A DNA stretch of 64,000 nucleotides from Sphaerodactylus townsendi (Eukaryota). The notes below the pieces were generated by a model, which saw only the letters and a program-made list of their open reading frames with translations, had not been told where the DNA came from and did not search any database. This document shows positions 7,573-38,131 of this stretch, in pieces (position 1 is the stretch's first letter; every line of letters begins with the position of its first letter). The stretch spans positions 66,774,001 to 66,838,000 of the forward strand of contig NC_059427.1 in assembly GCF_021028975.2 (NCBI RefSeq). Direction: 5' to 3'. The translations under genes and the position numbers were made by a program.

Positions 7573-8706
<1,134 letters not shown>

Positions 8707-9706: not shown

Positions 9707-9847
9707 GGCTCATTCCGCACATGCAGAGTAATGCACTTTCAAACTGCTTTCAGTGCTCTTTGAAGCTGTGCGTAATAGCAAAATCCACTTGCAAACAGTT
9801 GTGAAAGTGGTTTGAAAACACATTATTTTGCGTGTGCGGAAGGGGCC
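9707..9847. mobile_element. PIF/Harbinger-type MITE
   Basis: TIRs GGCTCATTCCGCACA / TGTGCGGAAGGGGCC with 3-bp TSD ATG. Near-identical to 20997-21136. Confidence 0.8.
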
Positions 9848-12800: not shown

Positions 12801-13015
12801 GAATACCATGTATGAGCACCAGCTAAAGCTACAGTATTTATGAATAATTTTGACTGATGGTACATTCTCATCTCATTCCAGATTGGATATGTGATTCAGA
12901 AATTAACAAATGAAAATCTGAACTGAATCTGCTCTTATCTTTAGTCAATTGTGTCTCAGCAGATCATTTAATTGACAGGAATGTCTTCCAACCAGAATAC
13001 ATAGCATGTAGAGAC

Positions 13016-13400
13016 ACAGAATAGAAACACAAAGCAGGAAGGGACCTGAAGGATCCTCTAGTCCCGTTGTGGCGAACCTTTGGCACTCCAGATGTTATGG
13101 ACTACAATTCCCATCAGCCCCTTCCAGCATGGCCAATTGGCCATGCTGGCAGGGGCTGATGGGAATTGTAGTCCATAACATCTGGAGTGCCAAAGGTTCG
13201 CCACCACTGCGTCTAGTCCAACCAACCCCCTGCACAATGCATGAAATTCACAAGTACCTCCCCTCCCCCCTCTCCCCAAATGACCCCTGTTCTGTGCCCA
13301 GAGGAAGGCAAAAACCCTCAAGGATCCCTGGCCATTCTGGCCTGGAGGAAAATGACTTCCTGACCCCAAAGTGGCAAAGTGATAAAGCTCCGTATTCGGC
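13016..13400 (-). mobile_element. CR1 3' fragment hosting a MITE
   Basis: ...gaagggacc...tctagtccaac...cccctgcacaatgca, the reverse complement of the CR1 3' UTR. Confidence 0.6.
13064..13209. mobile_element. Palindromic hAT MITE (146 bp)
   Basis: Near-perfect palindrome centred on GGCCAATTGGCC, flanked by nTCTAGTC repeats. Confidence 0.9.
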
Positions 13401-16400: not shown

Positions 16401-17981
16401 ATATGTCTCCACAATATTTTGAGATTTCTCGTCTTCAGACTTAATTCAGGTTAGTCATTAATCTTGCCAAAATTAAGTGGCGGATTATTTCTACTCTTGT
16501 AAATTAGATCTAATTAGTCTCTTCGTAAAACCAGAAACATGAAGGTCAAAACACAGTTTAATGTTACTCAAAGTTATTTTCTCACTGGCATTCTCCCACA
16601 ACCATCTCAGTGTTTTCAAACTTTCAGGGAACAGAGGAATCCTTTCCACACAATTTTTATGGTAGCTCTTCTAATAATATAGAAGGGCACTAGGGTTATT
16701 TTCAACCCTGCCTTGTAATTAATGTCCTTGATGTAGAAAAAGCACGAAAGCACATAATAAATACACTTTCAGTTACCTGCCATTTTTACCCCGACCCCCC
16801 CCCCCGCACAATCCAGTGAACATGTGAACCACTTATTATACTTTGCTTTTCTATTCAAACTTTTAGGTGTCTATTTTTCTGCAGATTGTCATTTTCATTA
16901 TATGTTTTTAACAAATCAATAAAATTACTGGTTAAAAAAAACTTGGTGCAAAGAAACGCAAAGCCATCAGCTCTAGTACAGTAAAGATTGTTCAAAACAA
17001 GCTGTAATGACAAGGCCGGGGTTCTCTCTCTAGAGCATTAATGACCAATGCCTGAAATAGGTTGATCTTGGTCATAATTTTTCCGTGTCATTATTTCCCT
17101 TGTGGTCTAAAATCATTCTCCTGGTTGTTATGAAGCTATATTTTATAGATTAATGGTGTGCTTTTATTCTTTAGAAACTATGTGGAAATAAACCCTTGCC
17201 TCACAGGGGTGCAGTGTAACAACACATGTCCTTCCACTGCAGCGAATGATGTGAGAAGGAATGCTTGGCTGTGCTGAAGCATGGCCAGTATGAAGAATTC
17301 CCTGACCAGTCTTTGAGGCATTTAAAGGCCAGATCCTGCTAGGCTTCTGGTGATGGAGAAGCTTTAAAACTACAAACTCTCTCTTGCTGAGTGGATTTAC
17401 ATGACTGAACCTCTGTATGTTCTTTGCTCTGTTTGAGCTCCTTCCAATAATCCTGGTAGAAAGGGGGGGCTATATCTTGTTTACAGAAGGCATTTGCTGA
17501 GTAAAAGCACTGAGACTGAGCTGCGGATTAGAGTTCCATCTCGTGAGTACTAAACAAACTCCGGTTCACCCAGGCACCGGCATTTGTACATCATGGGGAA
17601 CCAGAGTTTGTTTCAAAGCAGGAATTCTTGATTGAAGGGAGAGTGAAGGATGGAGGAGTCGGCACAGGCACAGTAACACCTTGCGTTCATTGCAGTGTCC
17701 CAACTTAGCTGGGTTTGTTGTGAATCCTAAATGCAATATTGTAGGTCTGCCAGCTGTGGGTTGGGAAATACCCGGAGATTTTCGGGATGGAGTCTTGGGA
17801 GTATGACCTCAGCAGGGTATAATGCCATGCAGTCCAGCCTCCAAAGCAGCTATTTTCTTCAGGGAAACTGAACTTTGTAGTCTGGAGATCAGTTGTAATG
17901 GTGGGAGAGTTCCAGGCCTCATCAGGAGGTTGGCAATCCTAGTGGATCAGCCTACTATAAAATTTATTGGAGGGTCACTGA

Positions 17982-18318
17982 CAGTGGCAGAGGTATAAGG
18001 GGGCGGGGGGGATGCAGTGCACTGGGCGCGCGCTGGTGGGGGTGGAAAATTGCCCCCGGCCCCACCCCCTTTTAGTTCCTCTCTCCTGCCCCTTTGTTTT
18101 TCTCTCTTCCCACCAGGAAATTCCTTTCTCCTGCAGCCTGGTACGAACTACGCTTCCCAGGAGACCTTGCTCCTGGGAAGCGTAGTTCTCACCAGGCTGC
18201 AGGAGAGAGGAACTAAGGTAAGTGGGAAGGGGTGGGGGGTGGGGCCATGGGGGTTGCCATGGGGGCCAGGCCATGTGCCATTTTGCCTCGGCCCCCATTT
18301 TACACCCCTACATCTCTG
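17982..18318. mobile_element. hAT MITE with internal hairpin
   Basis: CAG...CTG termini, TSD GTCACTGA/GTCACTGT, and an internal inverted repeat at about 18127-18206. Confidence 0.7.
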
Positions 18319-18982
18319 GTCACTGTTGACAAAAAGCAAGCTGAGCCAAGCCTCTCTAGAACCCCAGTGGGTGTGGCACTGGGCATTTGCTCCTCCGACA
18401 TTGCTGTTGGATGGGCATGAGTGAATCAGCCCCCTGGCTGCTCCTACTGCCACTGGAGCTCAGTTTATCATTTTGACTTCCCAGCCACTCCCTGTAATGT
18501 AACCTACATGATCCTAATGCAACCAACCACTGTTGTGTCAGTGGAAGGAGTCATGCATTAGCTTACAAAAGTGTTCTAGGGAAAATTTCATTATCTGCAT
18601 AGAACAGATCCAGCCACAGCCTAATGTATGTCACATATCACCCCAAGTGTTTTAGAAAACTCTGATGTTTCTCTGTTTGGCTTTGGCTCTTTGGTTTGCC
18701 GCTGTGTTTTGTCTGCATCTTTAGCTCACTCTGCAGTCCAGCAATCATGTGTCCATAGTAAAGTTTTTTTAAACAAAATACTGATAAGATTTAGACTGTC
18801 AGCCACCTCTTTGTATCAACATGTTACCAGCTACATATCACTCCACAAATTATTCTGTTCAACGATATAAAGCATGATAGAAATAATGTGAATTTGTGAA
18901 ATGCTGCCAGAAGGTACTGGCAAAAGCAAGTCCTTCCCTCTGCAAACTAATTGCCAGTGGGCATTTTAAAAAAAGTTTAGCA

Positions 18983-19056
18983 CAGGGGTCTGCAATCTGC
19001 GGCTCTCCAGATGTTCATGGACTACAATTCCCATCAGCCCCTGCCAGCATGCCCTG
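18983..19056. mobile_element. hAT MITE (deleted derivative)
   Basis: CAGGGG...CCCTG, exact TSD GTTTAGCA, and the shared core ccagatgttcatggactacaattcccatcagcccc. Confidence 0.8.
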
Positions 19057-20617
19057 GTTTAGCATATCGCATTAATATGTAAAATCACAGTACGTAAATC
19101 TATTTGATTGAGAGTAGGGCAAACTATGCTTGTTTGTTTATAAACAAGGCAGCAGTTTGTTGCATTTAGAAACAGAGCCACATTCATATCAGAAGCAGCA
19201 TGAAGGGGATTGTTGCCATTTTCTCGACAACAACCTTTGTGCTTTTCACAGATCCTCACAAGTTTCCCCAAATACAGATGCCATGAGGGGGGAAGCTTCA
19301 CCTGTTGCCTTTCTGTCTGCTGGACAGCTGTTAAGGGCACAGAAGTCCTGCCAGAAAGGAAGAACTGATTAGCACAGACGTTAAAAGAATGGCCAGCAGT
19401 TAAAATGTGAAGAGAAACGGATGGTACCACTGCAATCCACAGCTCCGATTGTCCACTCATTCCAGATGCTCTGCAGTAATGCTCATTATCTTCAAAGGAG
19501 AAAAATCCTCACTAATGAGCTTGTTAAAAATAAAGACTACAAAAGAGGCAGGCTAGAGAAAGGCCCTGCAATCCAATAGGCTCTTCCAAGTAGAGAGCCA
19601 GAACACACTTCACAGCTCAGGATGTGTCAAAACCTTGCTGCATAATTAACATGCACAAAAACATTTTAAGCAGAAAATTACATTCCATAACAGCAATAAG
19701 GCACCAGGGACTGCAAATTACTTTTCAATGGCTCCCCACAGGCCATGTCAAGGGCATTTGACCTTAAGTCTCATGTTTAACCACACGTGTAGTGGGAAAT
19801 GGGAACAATCTTTCGCACCTGTCAGGCCTTATCTCTGAATTATTAGTGCGATGTTGTCAGTTAAAAAGCCCACACAGGGCAGTTTTTAAAAAATCCAAAT
19901 AAAACTCAACGCCATTTTAATTCCATGGTAATAATGCAACTATGCTTATATTGTTAAAGGACCATTGTTTGTTTAACCACCGTAATTACAATTGAGGTAG
20001 ATAGTTTCAGTAACAGCTGGTAGAACAAAGTGAACTCTTTTGTTCAAATGTAAAATGATCTGTTCAGGTAAAGCAAGTTATGAAATAGGATTTGTTTAGC
20101 AAGAAGAATTTTCTCTCTTTTCATCATTAGCAGCTATTATTTTGGGCAAAGCTCTAATCAGATGACTGAGTACCTTGGCAGGAGGCAGAGGCCACCAGTC
20201 ACATCACACCAGGGGGCACTTTTTGGAAAACAGAGGCCTGTACTTTGAGATTATTTATGATAATTAAACTAATTCTTGTTTCAGTCTTGTGGGCACTAAG
20301 ATTCTGGAAGATCTATTAATGGATCTCCCCAGTGTTCTTTAAAGGGCAGTAGTAATTTGGGGCTGTGACATCACAGGGAGAAATGGCTTCGCTTCCCCGG
20401 CATGGTTTTGTGGATCAATACCAATCCTTCTGTCTTTGGCTGGTAGTAGACCAAGAAGGAAAAATGATAGGATCTCACTCTTTGTTCATCTTTTCCCCCT
20501 TCCAAGTCTAATAACAGCACAATGGAGATCAATTTAATGGTTAAATTGCATGAGGAGGAAGTTCAATTCTTTCCCGCCTACTGCAGCTCTAATCTGAATT
20601 AGAGCCCAATATGGTTT

Positions 20618-21625
20618 TGTGTGTGTGTATGTGTGGTAAGTGCCACCAAGTCAGTTCTGACTTACAGAAACCATGTGAATGAATAACCTCCAAATATCCT
20701 ATCATTAACTGCCTTACTGAGGTTTTGCAGACTGAAGGCTGGGGCTTCCTTGACAAAATCAAGCCATCTTGTGTTGGGTCTTCTCCTTTTCCTGCTGCCT
20801 TCAACTTTTCCAAGCATTATTATCTTTTCCAATAATTGTTGTCCTTTCATGATGTGACCAAACCATGGCAGCCTCAGATTACTCATTTTAGTTTCTAGAG
20901 AAAGTTAATGCTTGATTTGATCTAGAACCTACTGATTTGTCTTTTTAAGCTTCGCTACTGGTTGATGGTATCCATAAAATTCTCCTCCAACACTACGGCT
21001 CATTCCGCACATGCAGAATAATGCACTTTCAACCTGCTTTCAGTGCTCTTTGGAGCTGTGCGGAATAGCAAAATCCACTTGCAAACAGTTGTGAAAGTGG
21101 TTTGAAAACACATTATTTTGCGTGTGCTGAAGGGCCTACAGTTCAAACAAATCAACTTTCTTCCTGTCGAAGTTTCACATCCATACATAGTAATAAGAAA
21201 TACTGTTGCATGAATTATCTTGGTCTTGGTCTCCAGTGACATATCCCTATACTTAATGATCTTTTCCAGGTTCTTCATGGCTGCCTTTCTCAGTATTCTT
21301 CTGATTTTATGGTTGTAGTCTCCCTTTTGGTTGATGATCAAGCCAAAGAATAGAAATCTTCACCAATTTCAATTTCCTGATTGTCAGCCTTAAAGTTGAG
21401 TAATTCTCCAGTAATCTTTGTCTTCTTGATGTTCAGTTATAATAACCCTGCTTTGGCACTTTCTGCTTTAACCTTCAGCAGTGGTTGCTTCAAGTCTTCA
21501 TTGTTTTCAGTCATAATAAGGTGTCATCAGCATATCTCAAACTGTCAATGTTCCTTTCACCAATTTTTACTCCACCTTCATCTAAAACTAATTCAGTTTT
21601 CCTTATGATATGTTCTGTATATACA
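20618..21625 (-). mobile_element. RTE/BovB-like LINE 3' fragment
   Basis: Minus-strand RLPWFGHIM...LEKIIMLGKVEGSRKRRRPNTRWLD and TKTKIIHATVFLITMYGCE, with a (CA)n-type tail. Confidence 0.88.
20997..21136. mobile_element. PIF/Harbinger-type MITE nested in the RTE LINE
   Basis: Same family as 9707-9847, with 3-bp TSD TAC. Confidence 0.8.
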
Positions 21626-22340
21626 TTGACAATATGTCTCCTATTTCCATTTAAAACCCACTGTGGAAATCTGTTCATGGATCTTCCAAAGTCATTGTTT
21701 TAATCTACCACTTTGAAGTTCAGACATGCTTCCTATTCAAAAAAATAGCTTTCAAATCTAACCAGGCTCCTCAGAGATAACTTTCTTTACTGACAGCAAT
21801 TTTGGTGTGTTTATGAGACCTAAAGGCTAAGTGTTCCATTTCTGATATGTATTAAAAACCAGACAGTTATCTCTGCTGTAATGTCTCCATATCACACTGC
21901 TCACCTACAGAACATCAGAACTTGAAGTAAATGCATCATGGGATTTGACTGTGACATATTCTCATAATGCAAAGTAACTGCAGCATAGGAATTTTGTTAG
22001 TCGGAAAAGCCATTTTCTGTGCATTTGTCCTCAAAGGCCTGTTCTGCATGGAATACCTGCCTCTGGGTCTTTGCTGTGCAGTGGAGTTGTTGTGGGATCT
22101 CCTTGTGTTTCTTTGTTTACACCTGAGGAAGCACTCCACTGCTAATGCGCAGCTTGCTTGCTGAAGTCTCCATGGCCTCTGCAGCTTTTCCTGGTTCTCT
22201 TAACTTGGCCTATCAACTCACTCTGGATTTGTTAAAGCCCTTCAAATTGCTGTTATATTGATATTGTAGCCCCTTTCCAAAAATAACTCCCCCTCCCCCA
22301 ATGAAAGAGGCAAAGCAATTCCCTGGCTCACACCCTACTG

Positions 22341-23277
22341 CAGGGGTGTAACGAGGCAGCCCTGGGCAAACTGTAGCCCTGGGCAAAACCTGAGTTGGAT
22401 GCCCCCCCATGGGCGGTCACTCCACCATGACCAAAAATTTTTTTTGCTCCAGGACATTGGTGCCTGCAGGGGGTGCATTTTTAGACATATCAGCACCACA
22501 ATTTCAGCATATCATCAAGAGACTGTCCTTATGCTACTCCCCAGGTTTGGTGAGGTTTGGTTCAAGGAGTCCAAAGTTATGGACTCCCAAAGGGGGTGCC
22601 CCATCCCCCATTGTTTCCAATGGGAGCTAATAGGAGATGGGGGCTACAGTTTTGAGGGTCCATAACTTTGGCCCCCCTGAACCAAACTGCACCAAACCTT
22701 GGGGGTGCCATAATCTCCAGATGATGTCCTGAAATTTTGGTGCCAGTACATCCAAAAATGCACCCCCTGCAGGAACATCCTAGAAATTTGCCCAAGAATC
22801 TTTGTTCTGCTTTGAGTTTTCTGCATTGCTGTCAATGGGGGTTGCAGGTTGTGGGGGGCACATTTCTGAAGTCACAATCTCAAAACTTTCAGGGTCTCAT
22901 CAGGAGACTTCCCTAATGATACCCCCCAAGTTTGGTGCAGTTTGGTTCAGGGGGGCCAAAGTTATGGACCCTCAAACTGTAGCCCCCATCTCCTATTAGC
23001 TCCCATTGGAAACAATGGGAGATAGGGGAACCCCCTTTGGGAGTCCATAACTTTGGACTCCCTGAACCAAACCTCACCAAACATGGGGGGTAGCATAAGG
23101 ACAGTCTCCTGATGATACGCTGAAATTTTGGTGCCGCTAGCCTAAAAACTGCGCCTCCTGCAGGCCAAAAATGGAAAACCACTAAAATACCCAAAAACGA
23201 ACCCAGCATTTTGATGCCCCCCACAAGGTGATGCCCTGGGCAGCTGCCCACCTTGCCCAATGGGCATTACGCCAGTG
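22341..23277. mobile_element. hAT non-autonomous element with long internal inverted repeat
   Basis: TIRs CAGGGGTGTAA / TTACGCCAGTG and exact TSD CCCTACTG. About 22465-22770 is inverted relative to about 22880-23165. Confidence 0.85.
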
Positions 23278-24447
23278 CCCTACTGAAGAAGGGGAAACTG
23301 TCCTATAACTGTTATTATCTCTCTCTCTCTCCCACTCCCCCCTACCACACAAACATATTTCCTGCTTCTGCTGCCATGGGAGGAGAGAGAGGCTTGTCAT
23401 CTCAATATTCCTCATTATTTTTATATTCCTATATTTGATCTATTCTCACATCTGCACCCTGATATCCCTGTAGTGGATGGGCAAGGGGATTCACACCATC
23501 CCTGGAAAAGAGAGGGGGCTGAGTACACAGGAACATTGGATGCATGGAGAGACCAAGCACTATCTGTTATCATTACATCAAGGTATTGATTCAATATATC
23601 GATATGAGAATTTAGAGGTGTATTTTGACTACATGGCATGTAGCTGAGTTTCTTTTCTTTGACTTCCATTTGCAGGCTACCCAAAGATACCAGCAAGAAG
23701 AGTAGGAAGCAGGAAGAAGTTGGCAACATGGAAGAGAGGGTGAGGGGGAAGGTGTGGACAGTAGTGGAAGTGTGTGGGAAGAGTGAAGCTAGGTAGACTG
23801 GCTGTGAGTGGAGGGAAGATGTCCAGGGCAAAGCTGTGCTCACTGGCAAGTCTGCCTCACTCTTATGATGAAGCAAATTAAAGTTATGCTAGAAATGGTG
23901 TTGCTTGCTACGGAGAGAACAGAAAGTGAAAGTGGGACTCAAGGAAATTCATCTGTACAAGAAATCTTGCCGTGATGAATATTTGCCCCAGCAGCGCAAC
24001 AGATACCTTATGCATAATCAGCCAAAGTGTTCTAGTCACTAGAAATTCCTGTGGCCAGTGGCAGAACTGGATAGTGCAGTTTTGAGATATAATTTTATAT
24101 GATAGGCTCAAGTGGGCTGTAATTCCCACAAATGATCTTTTTGGCTCCAGATGATTGCATTTCATCCCAAATCTTCTCTACTTAGGACTTTTCTGCATAG
24201 GGTTTTCTTGTTGGTTCTGCCCCCACAATGCTCCAGTTTATCCCCTGATTTCCTCATGCATTTTTGTGTCTTTAGTTTTCACTTTGAGTTTTTTTATCCA
24301 TCCCATCCTATCCCCATCCCTGATTTTGTGAGACCACTTTTACCCCAATGTTTTCTGGAAGCTGATTTGAACCATCTTTTCCTTCATGAGTAATATTTCT
24401 GTTGGCTTCCTTTGTCCTGTCCATTCCTACCCACCAGCCCACTCTTC

Positions 24448-24800
24448 AGCCCCATGGCACAGAGTGCTAAGCTGCACTACTGCAGTCAAAGCTCTACCAT
24501 GGCCTCAGTTCAAACCTAACAGAAGTTGGTTTCAGGTAGCCAGCTGAAGGTTGACTCAGTATTCCATCCTTCCGAGATTGGTAAAATGAGTACCCAGCTT
24601 GCTGAGGGGAAAGTATAGATCCGTGGTGGCGAACCTTTGGCACTCCAAAGGGTTTTGTAGTCCATGGGGATTGTAGTCCATACCATCTGGAGTGCCAAAG
24701 GTTCGCCACCACTGGTATAGATGATTGGGGAAGAAGTCTGCCTAGTAAACATTCTGATGTGATGTCACCCCATAGGTCAATAATGGTCCTGCTCCTGCAG
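24448..24800 (+). mobile_element. Sauria SINE interrupted by a MITE
   Basis: tRNA-like head plus the core GGTTGACTCAG..TTCCATCCTTCCGAG.T.GGTAAAATGAGTACCCAGCTTGCTG. Confidence 0.85.
24621..24714. mobile_element. hAT MITE (internally deleted palindrome)
   Basis: TIR CCGTGGTGGCGAACCTTTGGCACTCCA with exact TSD GTATAGAT. Confidence 0.9.
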
Positions 24801-24831
24801 TTTTATGTGCCATAGTGTTGCTATTTAAGAA

Positions 24832-25128
24832 GAAGAAGAGTTTGGATTTATATCCCCCCCTTTCTCTCCTGTAGGAGACTCAAAGGGGCTTACAACCTCC
24901 TTGCCCTTCCCCACTCACAACAAACACCCTGTGAGGTGGGTGGGGCTGAGAGAGCTCCGAAAAGCTGTGACTAGCCCAAGGTCACCCAGCTGGCATGCGT
25001 GGGAGTGCACAGGCTAATCTGAATTCCTCAGATAAGCCTCCACAGCTCAAGCGGCAGAGCAGGGAATCAAACCTGTTTCCCCCAGATTAGAATGCACCTG
25101 CTCTTAACCACTATGCCACTGCTGCTCC
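24832..25128 (-). mobile_element. tRNA-derived SINE, Squam3-like, (CTT)n tail
   Basis: Minus-strand A-box TGGCATAGTGG, B-box-like GGTTTGATTCC, (CTT)n tail, and flanking TTAAGAA repeat. Confidence 0.8.
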
Positions 25129-27722
25129 TTAAGAAACACATGTAGTGTCTTTGTATACTGTAAATCACAGGAGAAGTTTGCCATGAATTTGTTAGAGAAC
25201 AATATTCAGCCATGTGTGCCATTAAGGCATGAAGAAGAAAGGAATGGCTTACATGCTACTGGCAGATGCAATCACTTGTTTGGATGAACATCTGTCCAAA
25301 GCTATTAAGGTTTTGCTTGCATCTTGCCTCCCTACTCTGCCTCTGCTGCCTCACCATTGATTAGGAAGCCTACTCCAGAAGGAATAAACCTCAGTCCATT
25401 TCCATGGCACATGCACACACAGCAGTGACTCCTCTCCAGTCCAGCCAATTAGCAACAACAAAGAACAGACACATCCTTAACTAGACCAGTGTTAATGGTG
25501 GTCAGCATCTGAATGGAGGTGTCAGCAAATTCATTATGACATCAGAGCATACAACCACAGTCAGCGCTTCTGTCCTAAGAGCACTTCAGCAGCAGGAAGT
25601 CAAACATCACCTTTCCTTAAAATATGTGCCTTTCCTGAATGAAAGTCCACTATGGGGTTATGCTCATGTTGTGTAAGTAAAATTTACACTTTTAAGAAGA
25701 GTTACCCCAATCTAAACCCACTGATTAATGCAGCATATCAAACTTATTTGCAGATTGTATAGTAGTATGATAGCAGTTCATTGTGGAAATTACATACTTA
25801 AAAATAGACCCTATTCTGCTTAGTTGTCAAAAGAGGGCAGGCAGAAGATTTTTCTGAAGAAAGAACAGATGGAAAGAGGGTCAGGATTGTGGCAGCAAAC
25901 CCCACCCTGATCCCCATACTTTGGTTGGCTCTTTGTCCCCAGAACTTATGTACATATATAGGCAGGTACACTCTATCCACGTGATTTGGTGTCCTGTAAA
26001 ATGTGGGGTATAAGCCCAGCATAGAATTTGTCCATATGTAGGCTCTGTGCATACAGATTTGGTCAAGATATAAAAGCTTGGATTTGGGGGTGGTGAATAC
26101 AAACACGCCTCCCAGCATGTTCAGTTCCACATCTTCATATTGTCTGAAAAGAGCTAGAACTACTTAGGAAAAAATCATGGGAATTTTGAAGGAACTACAG
26201 TAACAAGCACAAAGAACCCATGGCACATTTTTTTCAAGAAAAAAAAATCAGACCAGAGATGGAACAGCATTGCCCTGAACATGGCTAAGGGAAAAGTCAA
26301 GCACTGAATTGCTGGCAGGTTTTGCTTTGAATTTATTTCCACTAGGAAATATCTCTTATAGAACTTACTGAGAGGTTGAAAAGACAACAATGGCTGTTCT
26401 CTACTGTGTTCTTCCCCCAACTTCAATTGTTCTAGAAACACGTGTGCCTTTTCAGGCAACAAAAATAATAATCACTTGTGCTAGTTATTAATTATTATTC
26501 AGTGTGTCTTGCTTCTGACAAATCCCTGAATGTTTCCCACCAGAGACAGACAGAAATGAAAATTATAAGCTGATGGGCTTCTTATATGGTCAAGTATTCT
26601 TGTATTCTAACTGCAGAATTTCTAAGTATGTCAACATGAACTGTAATCAACTTTATACCTAATATAAATGGAATAATGGCTTCATAAAAATCAGAATCAG
26701 TGCACTGGACATAGGTGATGAATTTACACATTAGATCTTACCAAATAGTTTACTGTTAGGATTGCAGAGGGCATTCTGGGGTAAAGTTTGTCATATATGT
26801 TGGAATAAGCGACTTCTGCATGCCTGGACACTGGAGGGTGCTGTGTATCTCACTCTGTGTTGTTGCCTCTCTTGTTTGCCCTCCTTGTCTGGGCCAGGAG
26901 ACCGCCCACTAACTTCCTTTCTTCCCCATGCTGGTTTCACTTCTGTCCTAGCCTTCAACCTGAGTGCATGGTCAATGGCTGCCTGCCATAGTGGGGCTTT
27001 CCCATTGAAGCAATCTCTCACTTGCACCCACGTGATGGCATGGTAGAGTGCCCACTTGTTCATAGGAAAAGTATTCCTTAGACTAGGGGTTCTTTCTATC
27101 TATCTACCTTTTTCCTGGAACAAAGCTGTGAACTGGAGATGCTTGAATAAATGTAAGTTTTACCTTTTACATTTTATCTCTTGAGAAGTTTCTATAAACT
27201 GCACTCACACACACTACTGGGCAGATCCATAATTCTAAACAAAATCTAACAATATATACATTGCATTGGGTTTGTCATATATATATATTGAGGTATGTTA
27301 CCATCCATATTATGCTACATCCACTTTTAATGCATAACTGTTTTGTGGCAATCAGATGTAAAGTACATTGGAAAGCCCAGTTTGGTTTTTGTGCACTTCT
27401 GGGAACATCAGCTATTATCTTGCATCTACCTAAATGTATATGAGATGCTCTTTGTCAATTGCTGTCACTACCTCTGCATCCTTCTTTTGAGTGATTCTTT
27501 TGGCTAATCTGGGTATAGCCACAGTGTAATTAGAGTTGGAGCTCACAGAAGTCTAGTTAAAGAATGTTGGAATGCCGGAGCTCAGCTCCAACCAGAACAC
27601 ATGAATTAATCATGGGAAATGTCTTAGCCTATACAGAATACATTTCAGCCTTCACTGAGTAGCCAAAGCCTTCTCACATATATCTGGAATTGGGAGGTTT
27701 GAATTAAGGCTGTGCTTTCTAA

Positions 27723-28225
27723 GGCCGTTTCCGCACGGCCTCCCTGTCGCCTCCACGCCGGCGAGAATTCCGCCGGCGTGGAGGCGAAGGTCGTTCGCAT
27801 GCACGCATGCGAGCGGCCGCAGCAGAGGCCGGCAAATGGCTCTTCTCCCTGGCCCGTCCCACTCACCTTGTCCCCGTCGTCGCCTGCTGGCCGTCGAAGC
27901 CCCGCCCACGCTGCCCTCCGACCTCCAGGGGTCGGAGGACAGTGTGGGCGGGGCTTCGACGGCCAGCAGGCGTAATTTACTGGGACAAGGTGAGTGGGAC
28001 GGGCCAGGGAGACAGCGTGTTCCCGGCGGCGCTGGCTCGCGAACCTGTCAGTTGAAGACGCTTTCCCCCCAACAACAACCCTTTAAAGGGTTGTTGTTTA
28101 GGGCGGCCTGACGCCGCCCTGGGGGGGGGGAAGCGCAGTCAGGTTGGCGCTGCTGCGAACGGCGGCCTGGGGGCGGCGTTTTTACCGCCCCCAGGCCGTC
28201 GTTTTTGGCCCATGCGGAAAGGGCC
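27723..28225. mobile_element. CpG-rich PIF/Harbinger non-autonomous element
   Basis: TIRs GGCCGTTTCCGCA / TGCGGAAAGGGCC, TSD TAA, and several internal palindromes. Confidence 0.85.
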
Positions 28226-28471
28226 TAAGCCAGTCTGAAATGCTGGAGCATTTTTTAGACTGCAAGAACGGAGTATACCTAATAGCGTCGTATAGGGTGG
28301 TCAATTGCTCTTCCAACTCTTACTAGCCTAATTATGTATATGACAGAATCACAGGGAAAGTCTTGTTATTTGTTAACGGCTTGAGAGTTCTTGTAGCATA
28401 GGCTCAGGTACCATTTGGGACATTTTAACCCTAAGCTCTGTACTTACCATTTTTTCCTCTTTTCCTTTGCA

Positions 28472-28555
28472 ATGGGTGTCAAGTATCGAAGAAGTTATTC
28501 TGATGAGCCATTTGCTTACCCTGAACCTGTACCACCTCTGTACGAAGCAATTAAG
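28472..28555 (+). CDS. IQCF-like, predicted first coding exon (MGVKYRRSYSDEPFAYPEPVPPLYEAIK)
   Basis: GCAATGG Kozak context and 28 open codons. The phase-0 donor AAG|GTACAT matches the phase-0 acceptor at 31211. The MGVK start resembles IQCF N-termini. Confidence 0.62.
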
Positions 28556-29699
28556 GTACATACCAGGCTTGTATGCAGCCAGCAGTAAGGTGATCGAACT
28601 CAGTTATACGTCGTTCTCACTGTCCTTTGAACATTCTGTAACATTCATCTCTTTGTCAGGCAATGACTTTAAACTGTTTCACACACAAATGAATTAACCT
28701 GTGCAGAATGAGAGGTGATCATGTTTCTCCTTCTCAATTGTGTCAACAGTAGTGACAAATACACTCAGTACCCCCAGACACACAAGGTATTTAGGAATAC
28801 ATTCCCTCAGCTATCATGGGTGATTATTGATGATGCATTCATTTAATCAAACGTAGAGTAGATCCATACTATATCTCATGGTTCACTTTAAAAAAAAGAC
28901 AAGCAAGCTCTGGTCACTATGTTTCCACCTCAGGAACATGACGAATGAGAGTCAGGATATGAGCATCCAGACAGGGATTCTACTGAAACCCTCTAATCAG
29001 GAAAGTGTAGGGTTATTCATGTTTGACTGGCTTTAATAGCTGAAATAGGTCAGCAATCAAAATGCCAATAAATCAGTCACTACATGTTACGGTTGTTGAA
29101 GACATCGAAATAGCAAACAAGGCAAAAGCAGGAATCTACCTCCATGCAGGATGTTCTGTTTCATAACATGAAACATCATAACATCAAAACATGAGGAGCA
29201 AAAACTACCAGACCATAGGAAAGGGCCATAGCTGGCTCACCAACAAAACCTGTTGAAAGGTGCTCCTGGCCACTCATTCCACTTGTTTATCCTTGGTTTG
29301 GCTGGATTAGTTTTAATATATTTGTTTATTTTAAGTTATTTACAGCCCACCTTTCTCACAGGTACTCAAGGTGGACGACACAAAGTTCACATTCAACAGA
29401 ATGGGACATTCAATAACCAATGCATTAGGATTTCAGAAGTCTGGAAATATCAGAAAGAGGAGAAACATAGCATAACTATTACCTTAACACATAAAACAGG
29501 CCAAAATCACTATAGGATCCTAGTTAAAATAAGCTATGTGGAATAGTAATGACCACAGCCCTAATAATTTATCTATGTAAATTTTGCTTGTTTTGTCTGA
29601 TTTGATTCCTTCTCTTGATGTTCTGTTTTATTTGCTGGTTATGCCAATAAAGGAATGATGACGACATCACTATCATGTTAAGATTCATGTAAATTTGTG

Positions 29700-30960
29700 A
29701 ACCATTTTGTACAGGGCAACCTTGTTAAACCTCATTTCTTCAAGCACCTGTTTACAGTTTCCACAGTCCCCCTGGGATCTGGTGGAAATACAAGGTAGAG
29801 ATGAGGGCTATCTACATACTTGTAGCAACACCAGAGGCCAGGGAGCCAAGCAGCACTTCTCCAGCAATTCACTCAGGAACTTATCTTTGGGGTAGGCCAA
29901 AGCCACCTTAAAGTGGTCCCAATCCCATAAGGCAGTCCCAAAGGATACTATGATCAATCATATCAAAAGCTCCTGAGAGGTCGAGAAGAATTAATAGGAT
30001 TGCACTTCCCTTGTCCATTTGCTGGAGTAGTTCAACTGCCAGGATGACCAGTGCTGTTTCAGTCCCCAAACCAGGTCTGAAGCCAGACTGAAGCCCCAGG
30101 ATCCAAACAATCTGCTTCATTCTGGGATCTCTGAGTGACGCTCCCCCTTGTTCAATCACCTTGCTTGAGAATGGTGCATTTGAGACTGCACAGGGCTTAT
30201 CCAGCTCTCCTGGATTGCTCACTTCAAGACAGGGGTAACTACCCCCTCTCTCAAGGAGGGATTTACAGTGTGATGTACCAGTTAAGAGCAGTGGACTCTA
30301 ATCTGGAAAACTAGTTGATTCTACATTCCTCCACATAGTGAACCTTAATATAGTGAACCAGGTTTGTTTCCCAACTCCTCCACATAAGCAGTGGACTCTA
30401 ATCTGGTGCACCAAGTTTCTTTCCCCTCTCCTACACATGAAACCTGCTAGGTGACCTTAGGCTAGTCACAGTTTTCTCAGAACTCTCTTAGCTCCACCTA
30501 CCTCACAAGGTGTCTGTTGTGGTGAGGGGAAGGGAAGGCCACTTTGAAACTTCTGAAAGGTAGAGAAAAGTAGGGTACAAAACCAACTCGTCTTCTTTTC
30601 TCCTGGACCCAGTCTACCAGCCTCTCCCTAGCTGGGGCCGGGGAGGTCATCCAAGCAGGAGGTATGCCTCAGACCTCCAAGAATCCTGTTCACATCCTCA
30701 GACTGAATAAGATGAAAGGTATCCCATACAACTATACAAGTCAGCACCCTGGGACCATCCAATCCTTTTACTGCTAGAGTAGAGTCCAGGGTGGAACAGA
30801 TGTGGAAGATTTTATCTGCAAAGTGTGGAGCAAAGTCAGCACAGCAAACCACCAAGCAGTCTACCTCCTCCCCCAGGCCAGAATCCAATAGGCCCCTGAC
30901 CATCTCAAAGAGTTCTGCAGGTCTACACTGTGTGGTTGCAACGAAGGCAAAGAAATATTA
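29700..30960 (-). mobile_element. L2 LINE ORF2 fragment, split by a SINE
   Basis: Minus-strand QSGFRPGLGTETALV...LLILLDLSGAFDMIDHSIL and FAPHFADKI. Confidence 0.85.
30270..30600 (+). mobile_element. Squam3-like SINE with duplicated head
   Basis: agcagtggactctaatctgg occurs twice; body ctccacctacctcacaagg...gtgaggggaaggg; CTT-like tail. Confidence 0.65.
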
Positions 30961-31210
30961 TTTATTAATTAAAATGTAAGGCTGTAACCTAATTGTTCAT
31001 CTCATATGGCAAGACTAGATCACTCCTATTTTTAATGCCCCACTGGTGTGCATTCATTACCTTGACCTTTATTGATACATCACTGGTTCTTTGATCTATC
31101 AGGAAAACACTGTTTGCTCTTTGGCTTATGTGATAGTGATAAGCAGTTTATTGTTTCCCATTTTATAGCTAAAAGTGACATCCCCCCCCCCCCCTTAACT
31201 TCTCTTCTAG

Positions 31211-31570
31211 GCTGCTGTCACTATCCAAGCCTGGTGGCGTGGTCAGCTAGTCCGGCGGACTTTGAGGCATGCTGTCATCTGTGTGTGGTGCATCCAGAAG
31301 TGGTGGGCCCGTGTTTTCCGCCAGCTTCAGGAAAAGCGAAGGATAAGGGCATTGGTGATGTACATTTGGCCTCAGAAGTCTGCTGTCCTCCTGCAGTCAG
31401 TATTTAAGATGTGGCTCAGACAAACCCAGTACAAGAAGTATCAGAAGGCAGCCCTAATCATCCAAAACAAATGGCGGTACTACGCCTACCTGAGAGAAGC
31501 CAGAAACTTTTCGAGCAAAAACCCAGCCTGTGAGGGTGTGAACTTGAACATTGAAATTATTGTTGGGTAA
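31211..31570 (+). CDS. IQ domain-containing protein F (IQCF)-like, last coding exon
   Basis: Polypyrimidine tract + ttctag| then an open frame AAVTIQAWWRGQLVRRTLRHAVICVWCIQKWW...SAVLLQSVFKMW...AALIIQNKWR...LNIEIIVG*. This has the motif order of mammalian IQCF proteins (IQAWWRG.LVRR.L; IQ.WW; AV.LQS..RMW; IIQ..WR). AATAAA signals at 31611-31621. Confidence 0.88.
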   Translation, partial: AAVTIQAWWRGQLVRRTLRHAVICVWCIQKWWARVFRQLQEKRRIRALVMYIWPQKSAVLLQSVFKMWLRQTQYKKYQKAALIIQNKWRYYAYLREARNFSSKNPACEGVNLNIEIIVG

Positions 31571-31848
31571 AAGAGACTTCATGCTAAAGGTAAAAAAGGC
31601 TGCCCCAGTCAATAAAATAAACACATTTTATAATTTCATTCCTCTTTCTCAAATGTGGCTTCCAGTTAACACATGGGGGTCAGGCAACAGCTCAAAGCAA
31701 TAGGTGAAATAAGAGTCAACTGAGATTGCTCTGAGTCAGTCCTTGATACTTGTGCATCACAAAGGAGCGATTCACACTTAAACTTGTGAGTTGACCAAAT
31801 ACAGCTAAACATTTTTCTGCTCTGGATCTGGGTTAAACAGTATCCCCA

Positions 31849-32929
31849 TGTGACGGATTAGTGTTTAAAATGGTTAATTTAAAAAGGTGCAGTTCAGTCA
31901 GAGCAGGAGCACCAAGAGTTAATCAGGGCTCCACCTGATTGGCGGAGAAGCAGTAGCCAGGAGCCACAGAGAGGGTGTGCTCGACTTATATAAAAAGCAG
32001 AGAGAGCCTGTTAGATAACAGCTTTACAGATTGGGGGATTGGGTGACACAGAGGTCGAGCCTAACACAAAGAGTGTGAGACACAGATCATGTCAGTCCTC
32101 AGATCCAGTCTAGAGCAGCGGTTCTCAACCTGTGGGTCGTGACCCCTTTGGGGGTCGAACGATCCTTCCCCAGGGGTCGCCTAAGACCATCGGAAAATGG
32201 TCTTTTTATATTTTATATATACCAATTTTATGGTTGGGGGTCACCACAACATGAGGAACTGTATTAAAGGGTCTCGGCATTAGGAAGGTTGAGAACCACT
32301 GGTTTAGAGGCAGAGAGAGCCCAGAGACAGAAGAAGAACGGCTAGGTGGCCAGTGTTCTCTAAGAAATCTCAGAACTGAGAGGAAAGATCCTTGTTTTCA
32401 CCAGAGGCTAGATGGCCAGTTGTTGATGGAAGATAAGAGGGAAACTTATTTCACAGGAACACTTCTAAGACCACACAGAGGACTTGGCTATTGTCTCATT
32501 AGGAGTCCACACCTAGATACTGGGACCGGAGAGTTCATGAGGGTGTGTTAGCATAACTGGCAGAGTTAAGTGAGGGTTTTGGGAAACCCCAGAGCTTGCT
32601 CTGTTCCAAGCCAGTGTGAAACCCTTTGGAGTTAAGGGTGGGTGTTTTAGGAGAGTGTTCAGGACCATGTTGGAAAGATTTACCCTTAAAAGAGATACCT
32701 GTTTCAAGCTATAACTTGAAACTGAAAAGGCCATTTAACTGAAACTGCATTGTGTTGTTAACATCTAAGTAAAATCTGCCTAAAGAACAAGAAATGCTTA
32801 AAAACCTCGCTGTAACATCAAACTGAGAAGTAAAGCATGAAAATAAATTCTAGTTTTGTTTTGCTGTTAAAAAGCCTCTCAGAGTACCATTTTTCCCTCA
32901 GAATGGGTGGCAACTTATGTATTCTGACA
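31849..32929 (+). mobile_element. Possible solo LTR
   Basis: TGT...ACA ends, an ATTGG box, TATAAAA at about 31988 and AATAAA at about 32842. No TSD was found. Confidence 0.4.
32116..32301. mobile_element. SPIN/URR1-type hAT MITE
   Basis: TIRs CAGCGGTTCTCAACCT / AGGTTGAGAACCACTG. The subterminal sequence matches recalled URR1/SPIN. TSD GTCTAGAG/GTTTAGAG. Confidence 0.88.
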
Positions 32930-32978
32930 GGATTTTTGCCTAAAAGCTTGTGTGTGCGTGAGTGGGGTGTGCCTAGGC

Positions 32979-33124
32979 CCGTGGTGGCGAACCTTTGGCA
33001 CTCCAGATGTTATGGACTACAATTCCCATCAGCCCCTTCCAGCATGGCCAATTGGCCATGCTGGAAGGGGCTGATGGGAATTGCAGTCCATAACATCTGG
33101 AGCGCCAAAGGTTCGCCACCACGG
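32979..33124. mobile_element. Palindromic hAT MITE (146 bp)
   Basis: Near-perfect palindrome with exact TSD GCCTAGGC. Confidence 0.92.
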
Positions 33125-36100
33125 GCCTAGGCTAACACCAGCTATCAACTGAGCCCCTATACACTTCCCCCTGCTGGGCCTCTGTCTCTGTCAGGGAGTA
33201 GAGTGTGTTGCTAGCTGGGGCTAGCAAAGGGCTTCCAGCAGAAGGATAAAAATTAGGATCTAGGCTCGAACCGAAGTAATCACCTGACTTCTAGCTTCAT
33301 TGGTGAATGATGAAGGCAGCACAGGGATATTAATTGATTAGCAAATATATCATTTACTAGTAGCGGCTGGAACTAAAACACTGAAGAGCCATAGTATGAA
33401 ACATACAGAACAACGATATTCCACTATGTTCCCCTGAGAATAAAAGATCAAACTGCATCTCACCACCTCAAAATTATCCTACCTAAAATAGTTCAACCTT
33501 GAAAGTATCCATATAAGTTATCAACCCCACAACAATTTGTACTCGTTTGCCTGGCTATGTTAACAATTTGTGGCTAAAAACAAAAGAACCAACAGCATCT
33601 TAAAGGTTTCCCCCGCTTAGTAGCCTGGAGGCTGATTCTCACTCACTGCAGCTGAACGAGCAAGTGACTGCTTACAAGAGCAAGGTATCTCATTATGTAA
33701 CTATGATGCTACTTTGCTCCCCTTGAGCAGCTCTTGGAATGCTTCCCTGAGCCAAGATGTGTGAAATTGTTTAAATGGGTCATGCACATACTGTATATAT
33801 ATACAGGAAATCTCTGGAGTTGAGATTGGATAACTCTGATTTTCACTGTGTGGATAAATGATTCTCCCAAAACTTTTAAACATACAAACATTGATGGGAA
33901 TAAAAAAAAAAGCCAGACAGAGCATGACAAATCATGATCTGTGTCCTCCTGCGACCCTGAACTCTGCTCCTTTTGCAACCCTGAAGAATTGCAGCTTGCT
34001 TGAAAGGAAGGTTTGGAGTCACCTCGTTAGTTTAATTAGCTCCACCGGGCAAAGGGAAGAGAGGATGCCACAAACGTGTGGGCTTATACATTTATGCAGC
34101 CTCACCTTCTCAGACATCCTCTGCTGAACCGTTCTTGGGGGAACTGAGAGGGAAACAGGAAGGTGTTAATCCACTGCACTGTTTAGAAATGTAATGTCTC
34201 AGCTGGATCAAATCTGTAGCTGTCTCTGCCAGCCCCAGGGGGACTGCAGGAGAGAACCAGAGACAGAGAGAGCACTCTGGTTTCTTCCAGCCTGGAGGGG
34301 GTGCACAGCACAGGGGACAGCAGTGAGGGAGAGGAGCCCAGATTTATTAATAAATGTCTTTGTGTTATTGCCACCTCTGCAGAGGACTGTGGAGAGGGAC
34401 TGCCACTGCAGCCAATTTATCTGCTTATCTTTTTAATAAGCTGCCTAATTATCTTGCCAGTCTAACCCCCCTTTCACTTTGTATGACTCCAGGCACTGCT
34501 TTGTATTTACCCACCTTTTGGGCTGTTAATTTAGCTTATAATTCCTTGATTTAAACAGCTCTCTGTTGGGCTTTCTACCCCTCTGGGTTGGCGCCTTGTT
34601 TGCTTCACTTCATCTGCCCACAAGCACCATCCAAGTGGAAAAACAAGGTGACCTTTTTGTTTTCACCATGGATATTTCAAACAGATTTTACTGCTGATAA
34701 TCAGTTCCAGTCCTTCTCTTCACATTTCCTCTCCTGTCTCTCCTTTACCCTTCCATTTCTTGCTCTTGTTCCTAGTTAACTCACCCTTGTTTTAAGCATT
34801 CGTCCACATTTTGCCTCTATATTCTTTTCCCTCTGGTGTTCGAAATCATCCCTCTTCTTTGCTTTGTTCATTTCCCATAAACATTCTCTTGCCTAACCTG
34901 TAACCTCTTTAAAGAGAGGTGCGTTTTCCTGGGTTTCTCTTCATAGGTCAGTGGGACACAGTTTTTAAAGGGAGGGGGGAACCCTGCCCCAGTTCTCTGA
35001 TTATGGAATTCAGAATGGGACAAATAGGCCCTGAGGATAAACATTTGAAGGGAAAAGTTACTGGGTGGAGTTCCATAGGAGGGCCAAGGAAGTATGTCAG
35101 CCCTGAACCTACTCATGTCTCTCTTACCACTTCTGGAGGCATTTGATGCTGGAGATCCATCATTAGATTCTCCAGTCTGTAATTTCGCTGCCCAACTGAC
35201 TGGGGTTGTGGCACTGTGACAGAGGGCAATGATGCCACAGACAGCTACAAGCCCTTTTCACACCTGAGACTTAAAGCAGCCTGGAGGGAGCATTTTCAGT
35301 CAGGGATGTTTAATTACCCACTCCCTTTCCTCAGCTGCTTTCCAGTTAAATAACCCACCAGAAAAGGGGACCTAATGTGCAGAGACTTCATCACATGCAG
35401 TTTGGCTCTAAGTAGCTAGCAGTGAGAAGAGTCATGCACAACTTTGCGTTTGAGAGGGAGGGGGAGAAGGAGAACTGGGTCTGCTGATGCTGCTTTCATA
35501 TCATGGCCCAGCTGTGCAGTTGCAGACCCTGGCCCTCTTGCCTTGCAGAGCCCAGCCTAGTGTAGCTTCATTCACGCTCTTCCACCAGCTGGAGCCTCTC
35601 CTCAAAAGCACATGGTGTATAAAGCCACTACACAAACTACCTGACAAAGACTTGTGAGGACTTGCTTTGAGAGACAGCATCATCCTCAAAATGGAAGCTT
35701 TCTTTCTTCTCGTCTGTTCCTGACTTGTCTGTTCCAGTCACAAAAGGCTGGCTCCAGCAGCCTGTATTTTGAGCACAGTAATGGAAGCAGGGGAAGGGAA
35801 AAGGAGAAGTTTGACCTAGCGAATCTGTCAAAAATGAAGTGGCAGATGGCTCTGGACTCAGGTGCCCTCAAAGGGATCCTGTGACCTTCATGCCAAGGAA
35901 TCCAGATCAAATCTGAGAGTGAAGCAAACATAACTCACGGAGACAGAACTAAATGGCCTGAACAGCACAAGGTGACATCTTTTTTTAAAGATTGTCATTG
36001 CTGAGGCAGGCCTCCCTCACACAGCCTCTCTCTTGAACAAATTAGTTTCCCTGAAAGGTTAAAGGTCGTATGTGAAAAAAAATAGCTGTGCTATCATGCT

Positions 36101-37412
36101 GTGCTTTGGTGAAGTGGACTAGAGATCTAACAGCAAAGTCCTGGAAACCGGCACTGTCTTGTTTTGCAAATGAGACAGCGACTTTCCATCCTTTCTCTCA
36201 GCAATGCGCTTTGTACATGATAATGATATCTTAATTTGCATTAATTATAGCATTAATACATCCTTGGGGCTTCTCCAGAGCAGCAGCTAATTACTCTGTC
36301 ATATGGATGTTCTGGGACATGGTCCCTGTGTTAGCCTGCCTCAAATTCCACCAAGCTTTTGTTGGGAAGGACGGACTAGAAGGCAGAGGTGGCGGTCAGA
36401 GAAGGCTATAAAAAGGGCTCTCAGCTGTTCCACAGGTACGTGACTCAGGCTATCATTATCATTTTCACCACATCTCAAGAAATGTTAGCAAAGCTAAATC
36501 AGGTCATTAAGAAATACCCACAGACTGTAGGCACAAAAAAGGCACTTGTTCCCAGTATATTCTAAGTCTAATGCTACCATCCTCAATAACTGTCTACTTT
36601 ATTTCCACAAATACACCTTCACCTCAAGTTATAACTGTCAAAGGTGTTCACCTGCCCACAGCCCCTTCTCATGAATATGTTTCAGGTATAACCCCCATTT
36701 CTTTGACTTAATCTCTCATCTTGCTATAAATCTCCTCTGCTTAATAGAGCGAGAAAGCTTGAAATCCTTTGAAATCGGCAGGATCCAAATTCTCATGGGA
36801 AGACTACACAGTGTCAAGATGACCTTTGGTCATTCCAAGATTAGCAATATGCTAGAGATGTAAAGTCTGAAAGAGGGGACTCTATTACATTTTACAGAAG
36901 CTGTCATGCATTGAAATTTGCAACAATTTTTCCATCTACCACCTAAGAAAACCTCAGAACATCCCTGTAAGCATGCCAGAGTTTTATCGCCGTTATATTG
37001 ACTGGGTGGCTAAGAGAGAGATAATAGCTTGCCTAATGCCACCTAGTAATTTCACAGATGAACACAGATTTGAATTTGTTTACAGTCCATTGAACAGAAA
37101 TAATGTAATGCTTTCTCTTTGGTCTCATGTTGCATTCTCATATCCCCCTGCCAGGTCCATAGGCTGAGTACAGTTCTTTGAGATCCCCAAAATGGATGGC
37201 CCCAGGATGTGGTTGGAAGGCACGTGATGTGGCAGACTCAGTGAAGCTAATAGCTCTGGGTCTGATGAGGGCCTGGACTGGAGACCTCCAGGAAATGTTA
37301 TGTGTTCTGCCTTAACATTAATGATGGAAGAAGGGTGAGATCATAAATATCATAAGACATTGACCATAGTGCCTTCTGGTTTTAAACATAACTCTCTGCT
37401 AGCTCTTGTTTA

Positions 37413-38131
<719 letters not shown>

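What the first reader, a model, noticed from the sequence alone, without database searches (positions are those of the whole stretch)
28472..31621. IQCF-like gene nested antisense inside the GRM2 intron
Seen: an ATG exon (28472-28555) and a terminal exon (31211-31570) join in phase 0 into a stop-free ~147-aa protein with repeated IQ-like motifs. It has a strong acceptor and tandem AATAAA about 40 nt after the stop. The ORF track misses the diagnostic IQAWWRGQLVRR segment and exon 1. Known: mammalian IQCF genes are testis-expressed IQ-motif genes clustered beside, not within, GRM2 on human 3p21. Inference: IQCF-GRM2 linkage goes back to the amniote ancestor, and this squamate has a single intron-nested copy. 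That could be the ancestral state or a local rearrangement.
Basis: partly seen in the sequence, partly recalled or inferred. Interest (0 to 1): 0.85.

Follow-up and report, generated by a model that had tools for sequence, protein, structure and literature searches.

The report
Lizard IQCF gene inside GRM2 intron
This is a real, expressed small calmodulin-binding-type (IQ-motif, IQCF family) gene lying backwards inside an intron of the glutamate receptor gene GRM2; snake, turtle, crocodile, bird and one marsupial genomes hold the same arrangement, so it is old and ordinary, not a local rearrangement.

Summary
RNA reads from a close relative show the predicted splice 28555|31211 (47 reads, GT..AG). 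The exon is internal (28484-28555, acceptor AG at 28482-83). It is spliced to an upstream exon ending at 25672, with ATG at 25652, 7 codons (MGLCSCC) and a GTAAGT donor. The model is therefore three coding exons of 7+24+119 = 150 aa.

The terminal exon has Pfam IQ motifs and matches proteins named IQCF in birds, crocodile, turtle, snakes, lizards and mammals. dN/dS against two other squamates is 0.2-0.3. It is predicted as one long helix carrying four IQ-like motifs.

The host gene on the minus strand is GRM2 (exons 37913-37419 and 8547-7710; intron 28.9 kb). The same antisense nesting in the same intron occurs in Crotalus, Terrapene, Crocodylus, Tympanuchus and the marsupial Dromiciops. It is absent around the IQCF genes examined in two placentals. 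The nest is therefore ancestral to amniotes.

Squamate orthologues are already annotated by NCBI. This is a new member of a known family with a corrected gene model and modest evolutionary interest. Calmodulin binding, tissue and N-terminal lipidation remain inferred.

The parts
25632..25672 (+). IQCF exon 1. The 5' end is not mapped and lies at or upstream of about 25632. ATG at 25652-25654, 7 codons MGLCSCC, in-frame TGA at 25640-42, donor GTAAGT from 25673.
   Evidence: The loose-end consensus of 42 RNA reads matches 25643-25672 with 0 mismatches; 0 matches are expected by chance. Sequence read.
28472..28483 (+). This stretch is intronic: the end of the pyrimidine tract plus acceptor AG at 28482-83.
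   Evidence: Zero RNA depth in 28312-28475, and the loose ends begin exactly at 28484. Sequence.
28484..28555 (+). IQCF exon 2, 24 codons (YRRSYSDEPFAYPEPVPPLYEAIK), phase 0 at both ends.
   Evidence: RNA depth in X7 only. Joint 28555|31211 GT..AG in 47 reads. Translation.
31211..31570 (+). Coding part of IQCF exon 3: 119 codons plus TAA. Four IQ-like motifs at residues 5, 28, 61 and 84 of the exon, and a conserved C-terminal VNLNIEIIVG.
31571..31640 (+). 3' UTR with two overlapping AATAAA at 31611-31621. The approximate transcript end is not mapped on the window, because the relative has extra letters after 31603.
   Evidence: The depth drop and the loose end at 31603 are. AATAAA is conserved in L001 and L002.
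37419..37913 (-). GRM2 coding exon with ATG and signal peptide (165 codons), donor CAG|GTATTG.
   Evidence: (ANF_receptor). 83-88% identical to the crocodile and turtle exon.
7710..8547 (-). Next GRM2 coding exon (ligand-binding domain), with acceptor ...TTTCCTCAG| and donor G|GTAAGC.
   Evidence: (GRM2 534 bits vs GRM3 481).
5320..6410 (-). GRM2 exon with the cysteine-rich domain and most of the 7TM domain. Bounds are approximate.
   Evidence: (NCD3G, 7tm_3), and the tblastn ranges.
8548..37418 (-). GRM2 intron of 28,871 nt that contains the whole IQCF gene on the opposite strand.
   Evidence: with the same-intron arrangement in five other amniotes.

Best explanation
A functional, tissue-restricted, three-exon gene of the IQCF family lies on the + strand. 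It is a small IQ-motif protein of the kind that binds calmodulin, and it is the single sauropsid co-orthologue of the mammalian IQCF1-6 cluster. It is wholly contained, antisense, in the 28.9 kb intron between the first two coding exons of GRM2. Shown here: the exon 1-2 and 2-3 splices in RNA of a close relative; strong expression in one of three RNA libraries; purifying selection on the terminal exon; homology to named IQCF proteins; and the same nested position in snake, turtle, crocodile, bird and a marsupial. Inferred: the 150-aa product is a long single alpha-helix with two pairs of IQ motifs (23-residue spacing within each pair) that docks calmodulin or a calmodulin-like protein. Its N-terminus (Met-Gly followed by a cluster of cysteines) may be lipid-modified and hold it on a membrane. 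By analogy with mouse IQCF1 (acrosomal; knockout lowers sperm motility and acrosome reaction), it probably acts in male germ cells.
For: Splicing and expression: joint 28555|31211 in 47 reads; 42 reads join 28484 to a sequence that is exactly window 25643-25672, with a consensus donor. Depth is about 135-180x over the terminal exon in X7, against 0 to about 1 in X8 and X9 at equal sampling. Coding: dN/dS 0.20-0.30 at dS 0.29-0.46 against two other squamate contigs, with intact frames and conserved acceptor and AATAAA. Family: Pfam IQ; ostrich IQCF2-like E 1e-22 at 50% identity; the profile search reaches crocodile IQCF6 at 2e-44 and mammalian IQCF at 1e-23 to 1e-25; named squamate, turtle, marsupial and placental IQCF; Atlas IQCF5/F6 clusters at 0.95/0.92. 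Structure: a single helix over residues 2-98, mean pLDDT 82.6. Host and nesting. N-terminus: crocodile IQCF6 also has a tiny first coding exon starting MG. Hemicordylus isoform X1 starts MG and is cysteine-rich up to the same ..CC|RR junction. IQCF1 biology is taken from PMC11259432 and PMC12832936.
Against: The RNA comes from a close relative (about 1.6% divergent in the exon), not from the window's own individual, and its tissue is hidden by coded run names. The libraries are unstranded, so strand rests on GT..AG and the ORF. The transcription start and poly(A) site are not mapped. The joined 150-aa product was not searched or folded, by rule. Calmodulin binding, lipidation and a testis role are untested. 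N-terminal exons differ widely among squamate annotations; Crotalus, for example, starts MASKPKEE.
Confidence: 0.88

Rival explanations
1. One reading: translation starts at ATG 28472 in a first exon 28472-28555 and gives a 147-aa protein.
For: The ATG at 28472 is in frame and stop-free up to the donor. The 28555|31211 splice is real.
Against: No RNA depth in 28312-28475. All 42 reads crossing 28484 continue into the upstream exon at 25643-25672 (agreement 1). AG lies at 28482-83 behind a pyrimidine tract.
Confidence: 0.04
2. A transcribed but decaying or non-coding antisense transcript of the GRM2 intron, whose open frame is a relic.
For: It is antisense and intronic. Expression was seen in only one library. 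A 17-codon out-of-frame upstream ORF starts at 25639 and overlaps the main ATG.
Against: dN/dS is 0.2-0.3 over dS of 0.3-0.46, with no frame breaks in three squamates. There are 31 invariant columns across birds and squamates. The gene is retained in the same place in all amniote groups sampled except placentals. The main ATG has A at -3 and G at +4, whereas the upstream ATG has a weak context.
Confidence: 0.05
3. The nesting in this lizard is a recent local rearrangement or an assembly artefact, not an inherited position.
For: Human and dog IQCF genes lie beside GRM2, not inside it (general knowledge of 3p21). The intron is full of transposon debris.
Against: Same intron and same antisense orientation in Crotalus, Terrapene, Crocodylus, Tympanuchus and Dromiciops, all from independent assemblies. 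The window has no N.
Confidence: 0.02

Closest known systems
Sauropsid genes annotated 'IQ domain-containing protein F6' (e.g. Crotalus tigris XP_039198570.1, Varanus komodoensis XP_044307174.1, Terrapene XP_029768441.1, Crocodylus porosus; also Hemicordylus capensis 'F2-like')
   Same: 55-58% identity over the whole terminal exon. Same conserved exon boundary (..K|AAVTIQ..), same C-terminal (V/I)DLNIEI(I/V)VG ending, and same antisense position in the same GRM2 intron.
   Different: N-terminal exons are short and very divergent between lineages. This lizard's N-terminus (MGLCSCC + 24 residues) resembles only the Hemicordylus X1 and, in outline, the crocodile starts. The name 'F6' is a nearest-hit label: in the tree all mammalian paralogues form one clade (100/100), so the sauropsid gene corresponds to the whole cluster.
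Mammalian IQCF1-IQCF6 cluster (human 3p21, next to GRM2 and RRP9). Mouse IQCF1 is an acrosomal calmodulin-binding protein.
   Same: The IQAWWRG.LVRR signature, 35-49% identity, small size, and linkage to GRM2. A marsupial copy is still nested in the same GRM2 intron.
   Different: Mammals have several tandem paralogues. The copies examined in tenrec, naked mole-rat and Tasmanian devil are not inside GRM2. Mammalian N-termini do not show the Met-Gly-Cys start. Calmodulin binding and sperm function are shown only for the mouse protein (literature).
GAP-43/neuromodulin type small IQ proteins (functional analogy from general knowledge only)
   Same: A short protein with an N-terminal cysteine cluster that could take lipid, plus IQ motif(s). 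This design tethers calmodulin at a membrane.
   Different: No homology was tested or claimed. GAP-43 has one IQ motif and no Gly2. Lipidation of the lizard protein is purely inferred from seven residues.

Membership tests
IQCF (IQ motif containing F) family | IQ calmodulin-binding motifs (Pfam PF00612) making up most of a small protein | tested here: met
   Pfam IQ E 6.7e-9, 35.2 bits against a cutoff of 20.3, in two stretches. Four IQ-like motifs lie on one predicted helix.
IQCF (IQ motif containing F) family | Significant full-length similarity to proteins named IQCF, including the IQAWWRG.LVRR signature, and not merely to any IQ protein | tested here: met
   the top hits are all IQCF-named proteins of 100-210 aa aligned end to end. 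Long multi-IQ proteins appear only as weaker, partial matches. Atlas IQCF5/F6 clusters score 0.95/0.92.
IQCF (IQ motif containing F) family | Chromosomal linkage with GRM2 | tested here: met
   The gene lies inside the GRM2 intron. The same holds in five other amniotes. Mammalian linkage is taken from papers.
IQCF (IQ motif containing F) family | Testis/spermatid-restricted expression | tested here: inconclusive
   Strong expression in one of three RNA libraries of a close relative and none in the other two. The tissues are not disclosed.
IQCF (IQ motif containing F) family | Binding of calmodulin | not testable with these tools
Binding is inferred from the motifs only.
Nested (intron-hosted) antisense gene pair | All exons of the guest lie within one intron of the host, on the opposite strand | tested here: met
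   Guest exons span 25632-31640 (+), inside the host intron 8548-37418 (-).

The most novel reading that the evidence does not exclude
The antisense IQCF-in-GRM2 nest has been kept in the same intron since the amniote ancestor, in squamates, turtle, crocodile, bird and marsupial. It survives even where the intron has shrunk to 1.9 kb (bird). This could mean the two genes are functionally coupled, for example by mutually exclusive transcription in neurons versus germ cells, or by a shared regulatory element in the intron. Placentals would have escaped the coupling by moving and multiplying the gene. Separately, the squamate protein may be a lipid-anchored (Gly2/Cys cluster) calmodulin tether, a feature not described for mammalian IQCF.
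Probability: 0.15. Interest if true: 0.5.

Novelty: new member of a known kind. Interest (0 to 1): 0.33.

Why it matters
The finding itself is an ordinary orthologue of a gene that NCBI already annotates in other squamates. Three things are added here. First, an RNA-supported three-exon model corrects the start codon. Second, the nested position inside GRM2 is the ancestral amniote state: one marsupial still has it, and the placental IQCF copies examined do not. This turns the mammalian IQCF cluster into a case of a nested gene that left its host and multiplied. Third, there is a testable idea that the reptile protein is membrane-anchored by N-terminal lipidation. I found no paper describing the nest. 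It may interest people working on nested-gene evolution or on sperm calmodulin signalling, but it opens no major question.

Tried and rejected
2. Further IQCF-like exons in the window: tblastn with the lizard exon and seven homologues found only 31211-31567.
3. GRM3 as the host was rejected. GRM2 scores 46-130 bits higher for the exon-B comparisons and 17 bits higher for the shorter crocodile exon A.
4. It is too short for the homology tools.
5. The word-indexed search with the single exon returned only 7 proteins and no named squamate. The exhaustive representative search was needed to find them.
6. The tree cannot say which mammalian paralogue descends from the nested copy. Dromiciops groups with Heterocephalus IQCF6 at only 80/56 support.
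7. The sturgeon 'IQCF1-like' gene is nested in a semaphorin-domain gene, not in GRM2, so the pre-tetrapod position is unresolved.
8. No complex prediction with calmodulin was run, because no admissible calmodulin sequence was available.
9. The joined three-exon protein was not searched, folded or printed.
10. The scan's earlier notes held nothing on IQCF elsewhere in this genome.

Full report
**Observation**

The coordinates are accurate. ATG lies at 28472 and the frame is open to AAG|GTAC at 28555/28556 (28 codons). A C- and T-rich tract ends in AG at 31209-31210. A 119-codon open frame then runs 31211-31567 to TAA at 31568-31570. Two overlapping AATAAA lie at 31611-31621. The mechanical ORF list only begins at 31262, so it does miss the first IQ motif.

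**RNA evidence**

No RNA run of the window's own sample was on offer. Three RNA-seq runs (X7-X9) of a species holding 59% of the exon's sampled words were laid on 27000-31900, together with a contig set of a more distant species (X1).
- X7 gives 47 reads from 32 start places across a GT..AG joint.
- Depth over the terminal exon is about 135-180 in X7 (both read directions summed). It is 0 to about 1 in X8 and X9 at the same amount of sequence read, so expression is strongly sample-specific. The tissues are hidden by coding.
- An X1 contig also joins the end of the 28.5 kb exon to 31209 onward. That is independent support from another species and study.
- 42 X7 reads have a uniform loose end in front of 28484, and the bin 28312-28475 has no depth. 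AG lies at 28482-83 behind a pyrimidine tract.

**The true first coding exon**

The 30-letter loose-end consensus occurs once in the window, without mismatch, at 25643-25672 (none expected by chance). There the sequence reads in-frame TGA (25640-42), ATG at 25652 with A at -3 and G at +4, seven codons (MGLCSCC), then GTAAGT.

The frame continues into 28484-28555 (24 codons) and 31211-31567 (119 codons), giving 150 residues.

The 5' end of exon 1 is not mapped, because the loose ends have a median of 41 letters. A weak-context, out-of-frame upstream ATG at 25639 opens a 17-codon ORF overlapping the main start.

**Is it a working gene?**

Two genomic contigs of other squamates (L001, L002) carry the terminal exon with the same acceptor, an intact frame and the AATAAA. 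Pairwise dN/dS is 0.20-0.30 at dS 0.29-0.46, which indicates purifying selection. No insertion or deletion in the exons passed the reporting threshold in the relative's RNA.

**What family?**

- Pfam finds IQ motifs (E 6.7e-9).
- The single-exon search finds ostrich IQCF2-like (50% identity over the whole exon, E 1e-22) and goose and pigeon IQCF5-like/F6.
- A profile search reaches crocodile IQCF6 (2e-44), many bird IQCF6, and tenrec and bat IQCF (1e-25, 1e-23).
- The exhaustive representative search with cluster names adds NCBI-annotated squamate orthologues: Crotalus tigris and C. adamanteus IQCF6, Varanus komodoensis IQCF6 and Hemicordylus capensis F2-like. It also adds turtle IQCF6, marsupial IQCF6-like, placental IQCF1/2/5/6 and sturgeon IQCF1-like.
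- The ESM Atlas points to IQCF5/F6 clusters (0.95/0.92).
- In all sauropsid homologues examined, similarity starts at the conserved ..AAV(T/A)IQAWWRG.. point. In the lizard this is the exon 3 boundary; crocodile exon 3 starts about 22 residues earlier.

In a maximum-likelihood tree rooted on sturgeon, all mammalian IQCF form one clade (100/100). The sauropsid genes, one per species sampled, lie outside it. The sauropsid gene is thus the counterpart of the whole mammalian cluster, and the labels F6, F2-like and so on are nearest-hit names.

**Protein**

AlphaFold2 with a 19-row alignment gives one helix over residues 2-98 of the exon (mean pLDDT 82.6) and a disordered tail before the conserved C-terminal motif. 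IQ-like cores sit at exon residues 5, 28, 61 and 84, which makes two pairs with 23-residue spacing. Calmodulin docking is inferred from this and from the literature on IQCF1: an acrosomal protein whose knockout mice have lower sperm motility and acrosome reaction.

The N-terminus is Met-Gly plus three cysteines in seven residues. It is echoed by crocodile IQCF6, which has a tiny first coding exon starting MGTQTSK. It is also echoed by Hemicordylus isoform X1, which starts MG and is cysteine-rich up to ..CC|RR... I read this as a possible myristoyl/palmitoyl anchor. That is an inference only.

**Host gene and nesting**

On the minus strand there are three relevant exons:
- an ATG/signal-peptide exon, 37913-37419;
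- a ligand-binding-domain exon, 8547-7710;
- an NCD3G + 7TM exon, about 6410-5320.

The middle exon scores 534 bits against solved GRM2 and 481 against GRM3. The intron between the first two exons is 28,871 nt and contains all three IQCF exons on the opposite strand.

**Ancestral or local?**

Public annotated contigs around IQCF proteins show the following.

| Species | Position of the IQCF gene |
|---|---|
| Crocodylus porosus | Inside an 873-aa mGluR gene, antisense, downstream of its ATG exon |
| Tympanuchus pallidicinctus | Between GRM2 exon A and exon B, in an intron of only 1.9 kb |
| Terrapene | Same position as in crocodile |
| Crotalus tigris | Upstream of exon B, inside the 874-aa host |
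| Dromiciops gliroides (marsupial) | IQCF6-like exons at L009 10999-11124 and 11922-12305 (+), between GRM2 exon A (14890-14492) and exon B (9174-8332) (-); host scores 591 bits for GRM2 vs 459 for GRM3 |

Not nested:
- tenrec IQCF6-like, which has a tandem IQ neighbour;
- naked mole-rat IQCF6, with no GRM2 exon within 10 kb;
- a Tasmanian devil copy lying tail to tail with a 475-aa WD40 gene.

Papers place human and dog IQCF6 in the same block as TEX264 and GRM2. The nest is therefore ancestral for amniotes. It is retained in sauropsids and at least one marsupial, and it is absent around the placental copies examined. No paper in the library links IQCF with nested genes.

**Verdict**

The start codon and exon count are corrected here. 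It belongs to a known family that is already annotated in other squamates. The evolutionary point, an old nest lost in placentals, and the possible lipid anchor are modestly new.

Noticed in passing
window 30280-30607: Very deep cover in all three RNA runs and in X1 (contig depth in the tens of thousands), with loose ends on both sides of about 30480-30536. This looks like the conserved core of an abundant, transcribed interspersed repeat (SINE-like) inside IQCF intron 2. Reverse-transcriptase-like ORFs lie on the minus strand at 29908-30222 and 30628-30903.
   Followed up: no
window 27000-27327 and 27700-28300: Low but consistent RNA cover in all three libraries (depth 1-13), unlike the IQCF exons. 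The stretch 27700-28240 is a G+C-rich block with internal inverted symmetry, probably a transposon insert in IQCF intron 1.
   Followed up: no
window 31603-31610: The relative's RNA (166 reads) and both other squamate contigs carry about 17-20 extra letters (..CTCAGAGTCAGACC..) in the 3' UTR just before the AATAAA. The window lacks them, so this is a small lineage-specific deletion.
   Followed up: partly
window 25639-25672 and on into exon 2: An out-of-frame upstream ATG (25639) opens a 17-codon ORF that overlaps the main start codon. Its context is weak (T at -3, A at +4), against A at -3 and G at +4 for the main ATG.
   Followed up: no
window 25538-25545 and 25446-25450: A CRE-like TGACATCA and a CCAAT box lie 100-200 nt upstream of the first coding exon. 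This is the kind of site used by spermatid promoters. It is only a motif resemblance.
   Followed up: no
L007 (Huso huso) 10001-10441: The sturgeon 'IQCF1-like' single-exon gene is nested antisense in a semaphorin-domain gene, not in GRM2. Either the family moved between hosts or this is a different paralogue.
   Followed up: partly
L008 (Sarcophilus harrisii) 10001-20952: A marsupial IQCF6-like copy lies tail to tail with a 475-aa WD40 gene, the size of RRP9, which flanks the human IQCF cluster. Marsupials thus seem to have both the nested and the cluster-type positions.
   Followed up: partly
window 45676-51999: Other first-stage notes on this window describe an endogenous retrovirus upstream of GRM2. 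I did not examine it.
   Followed up: no
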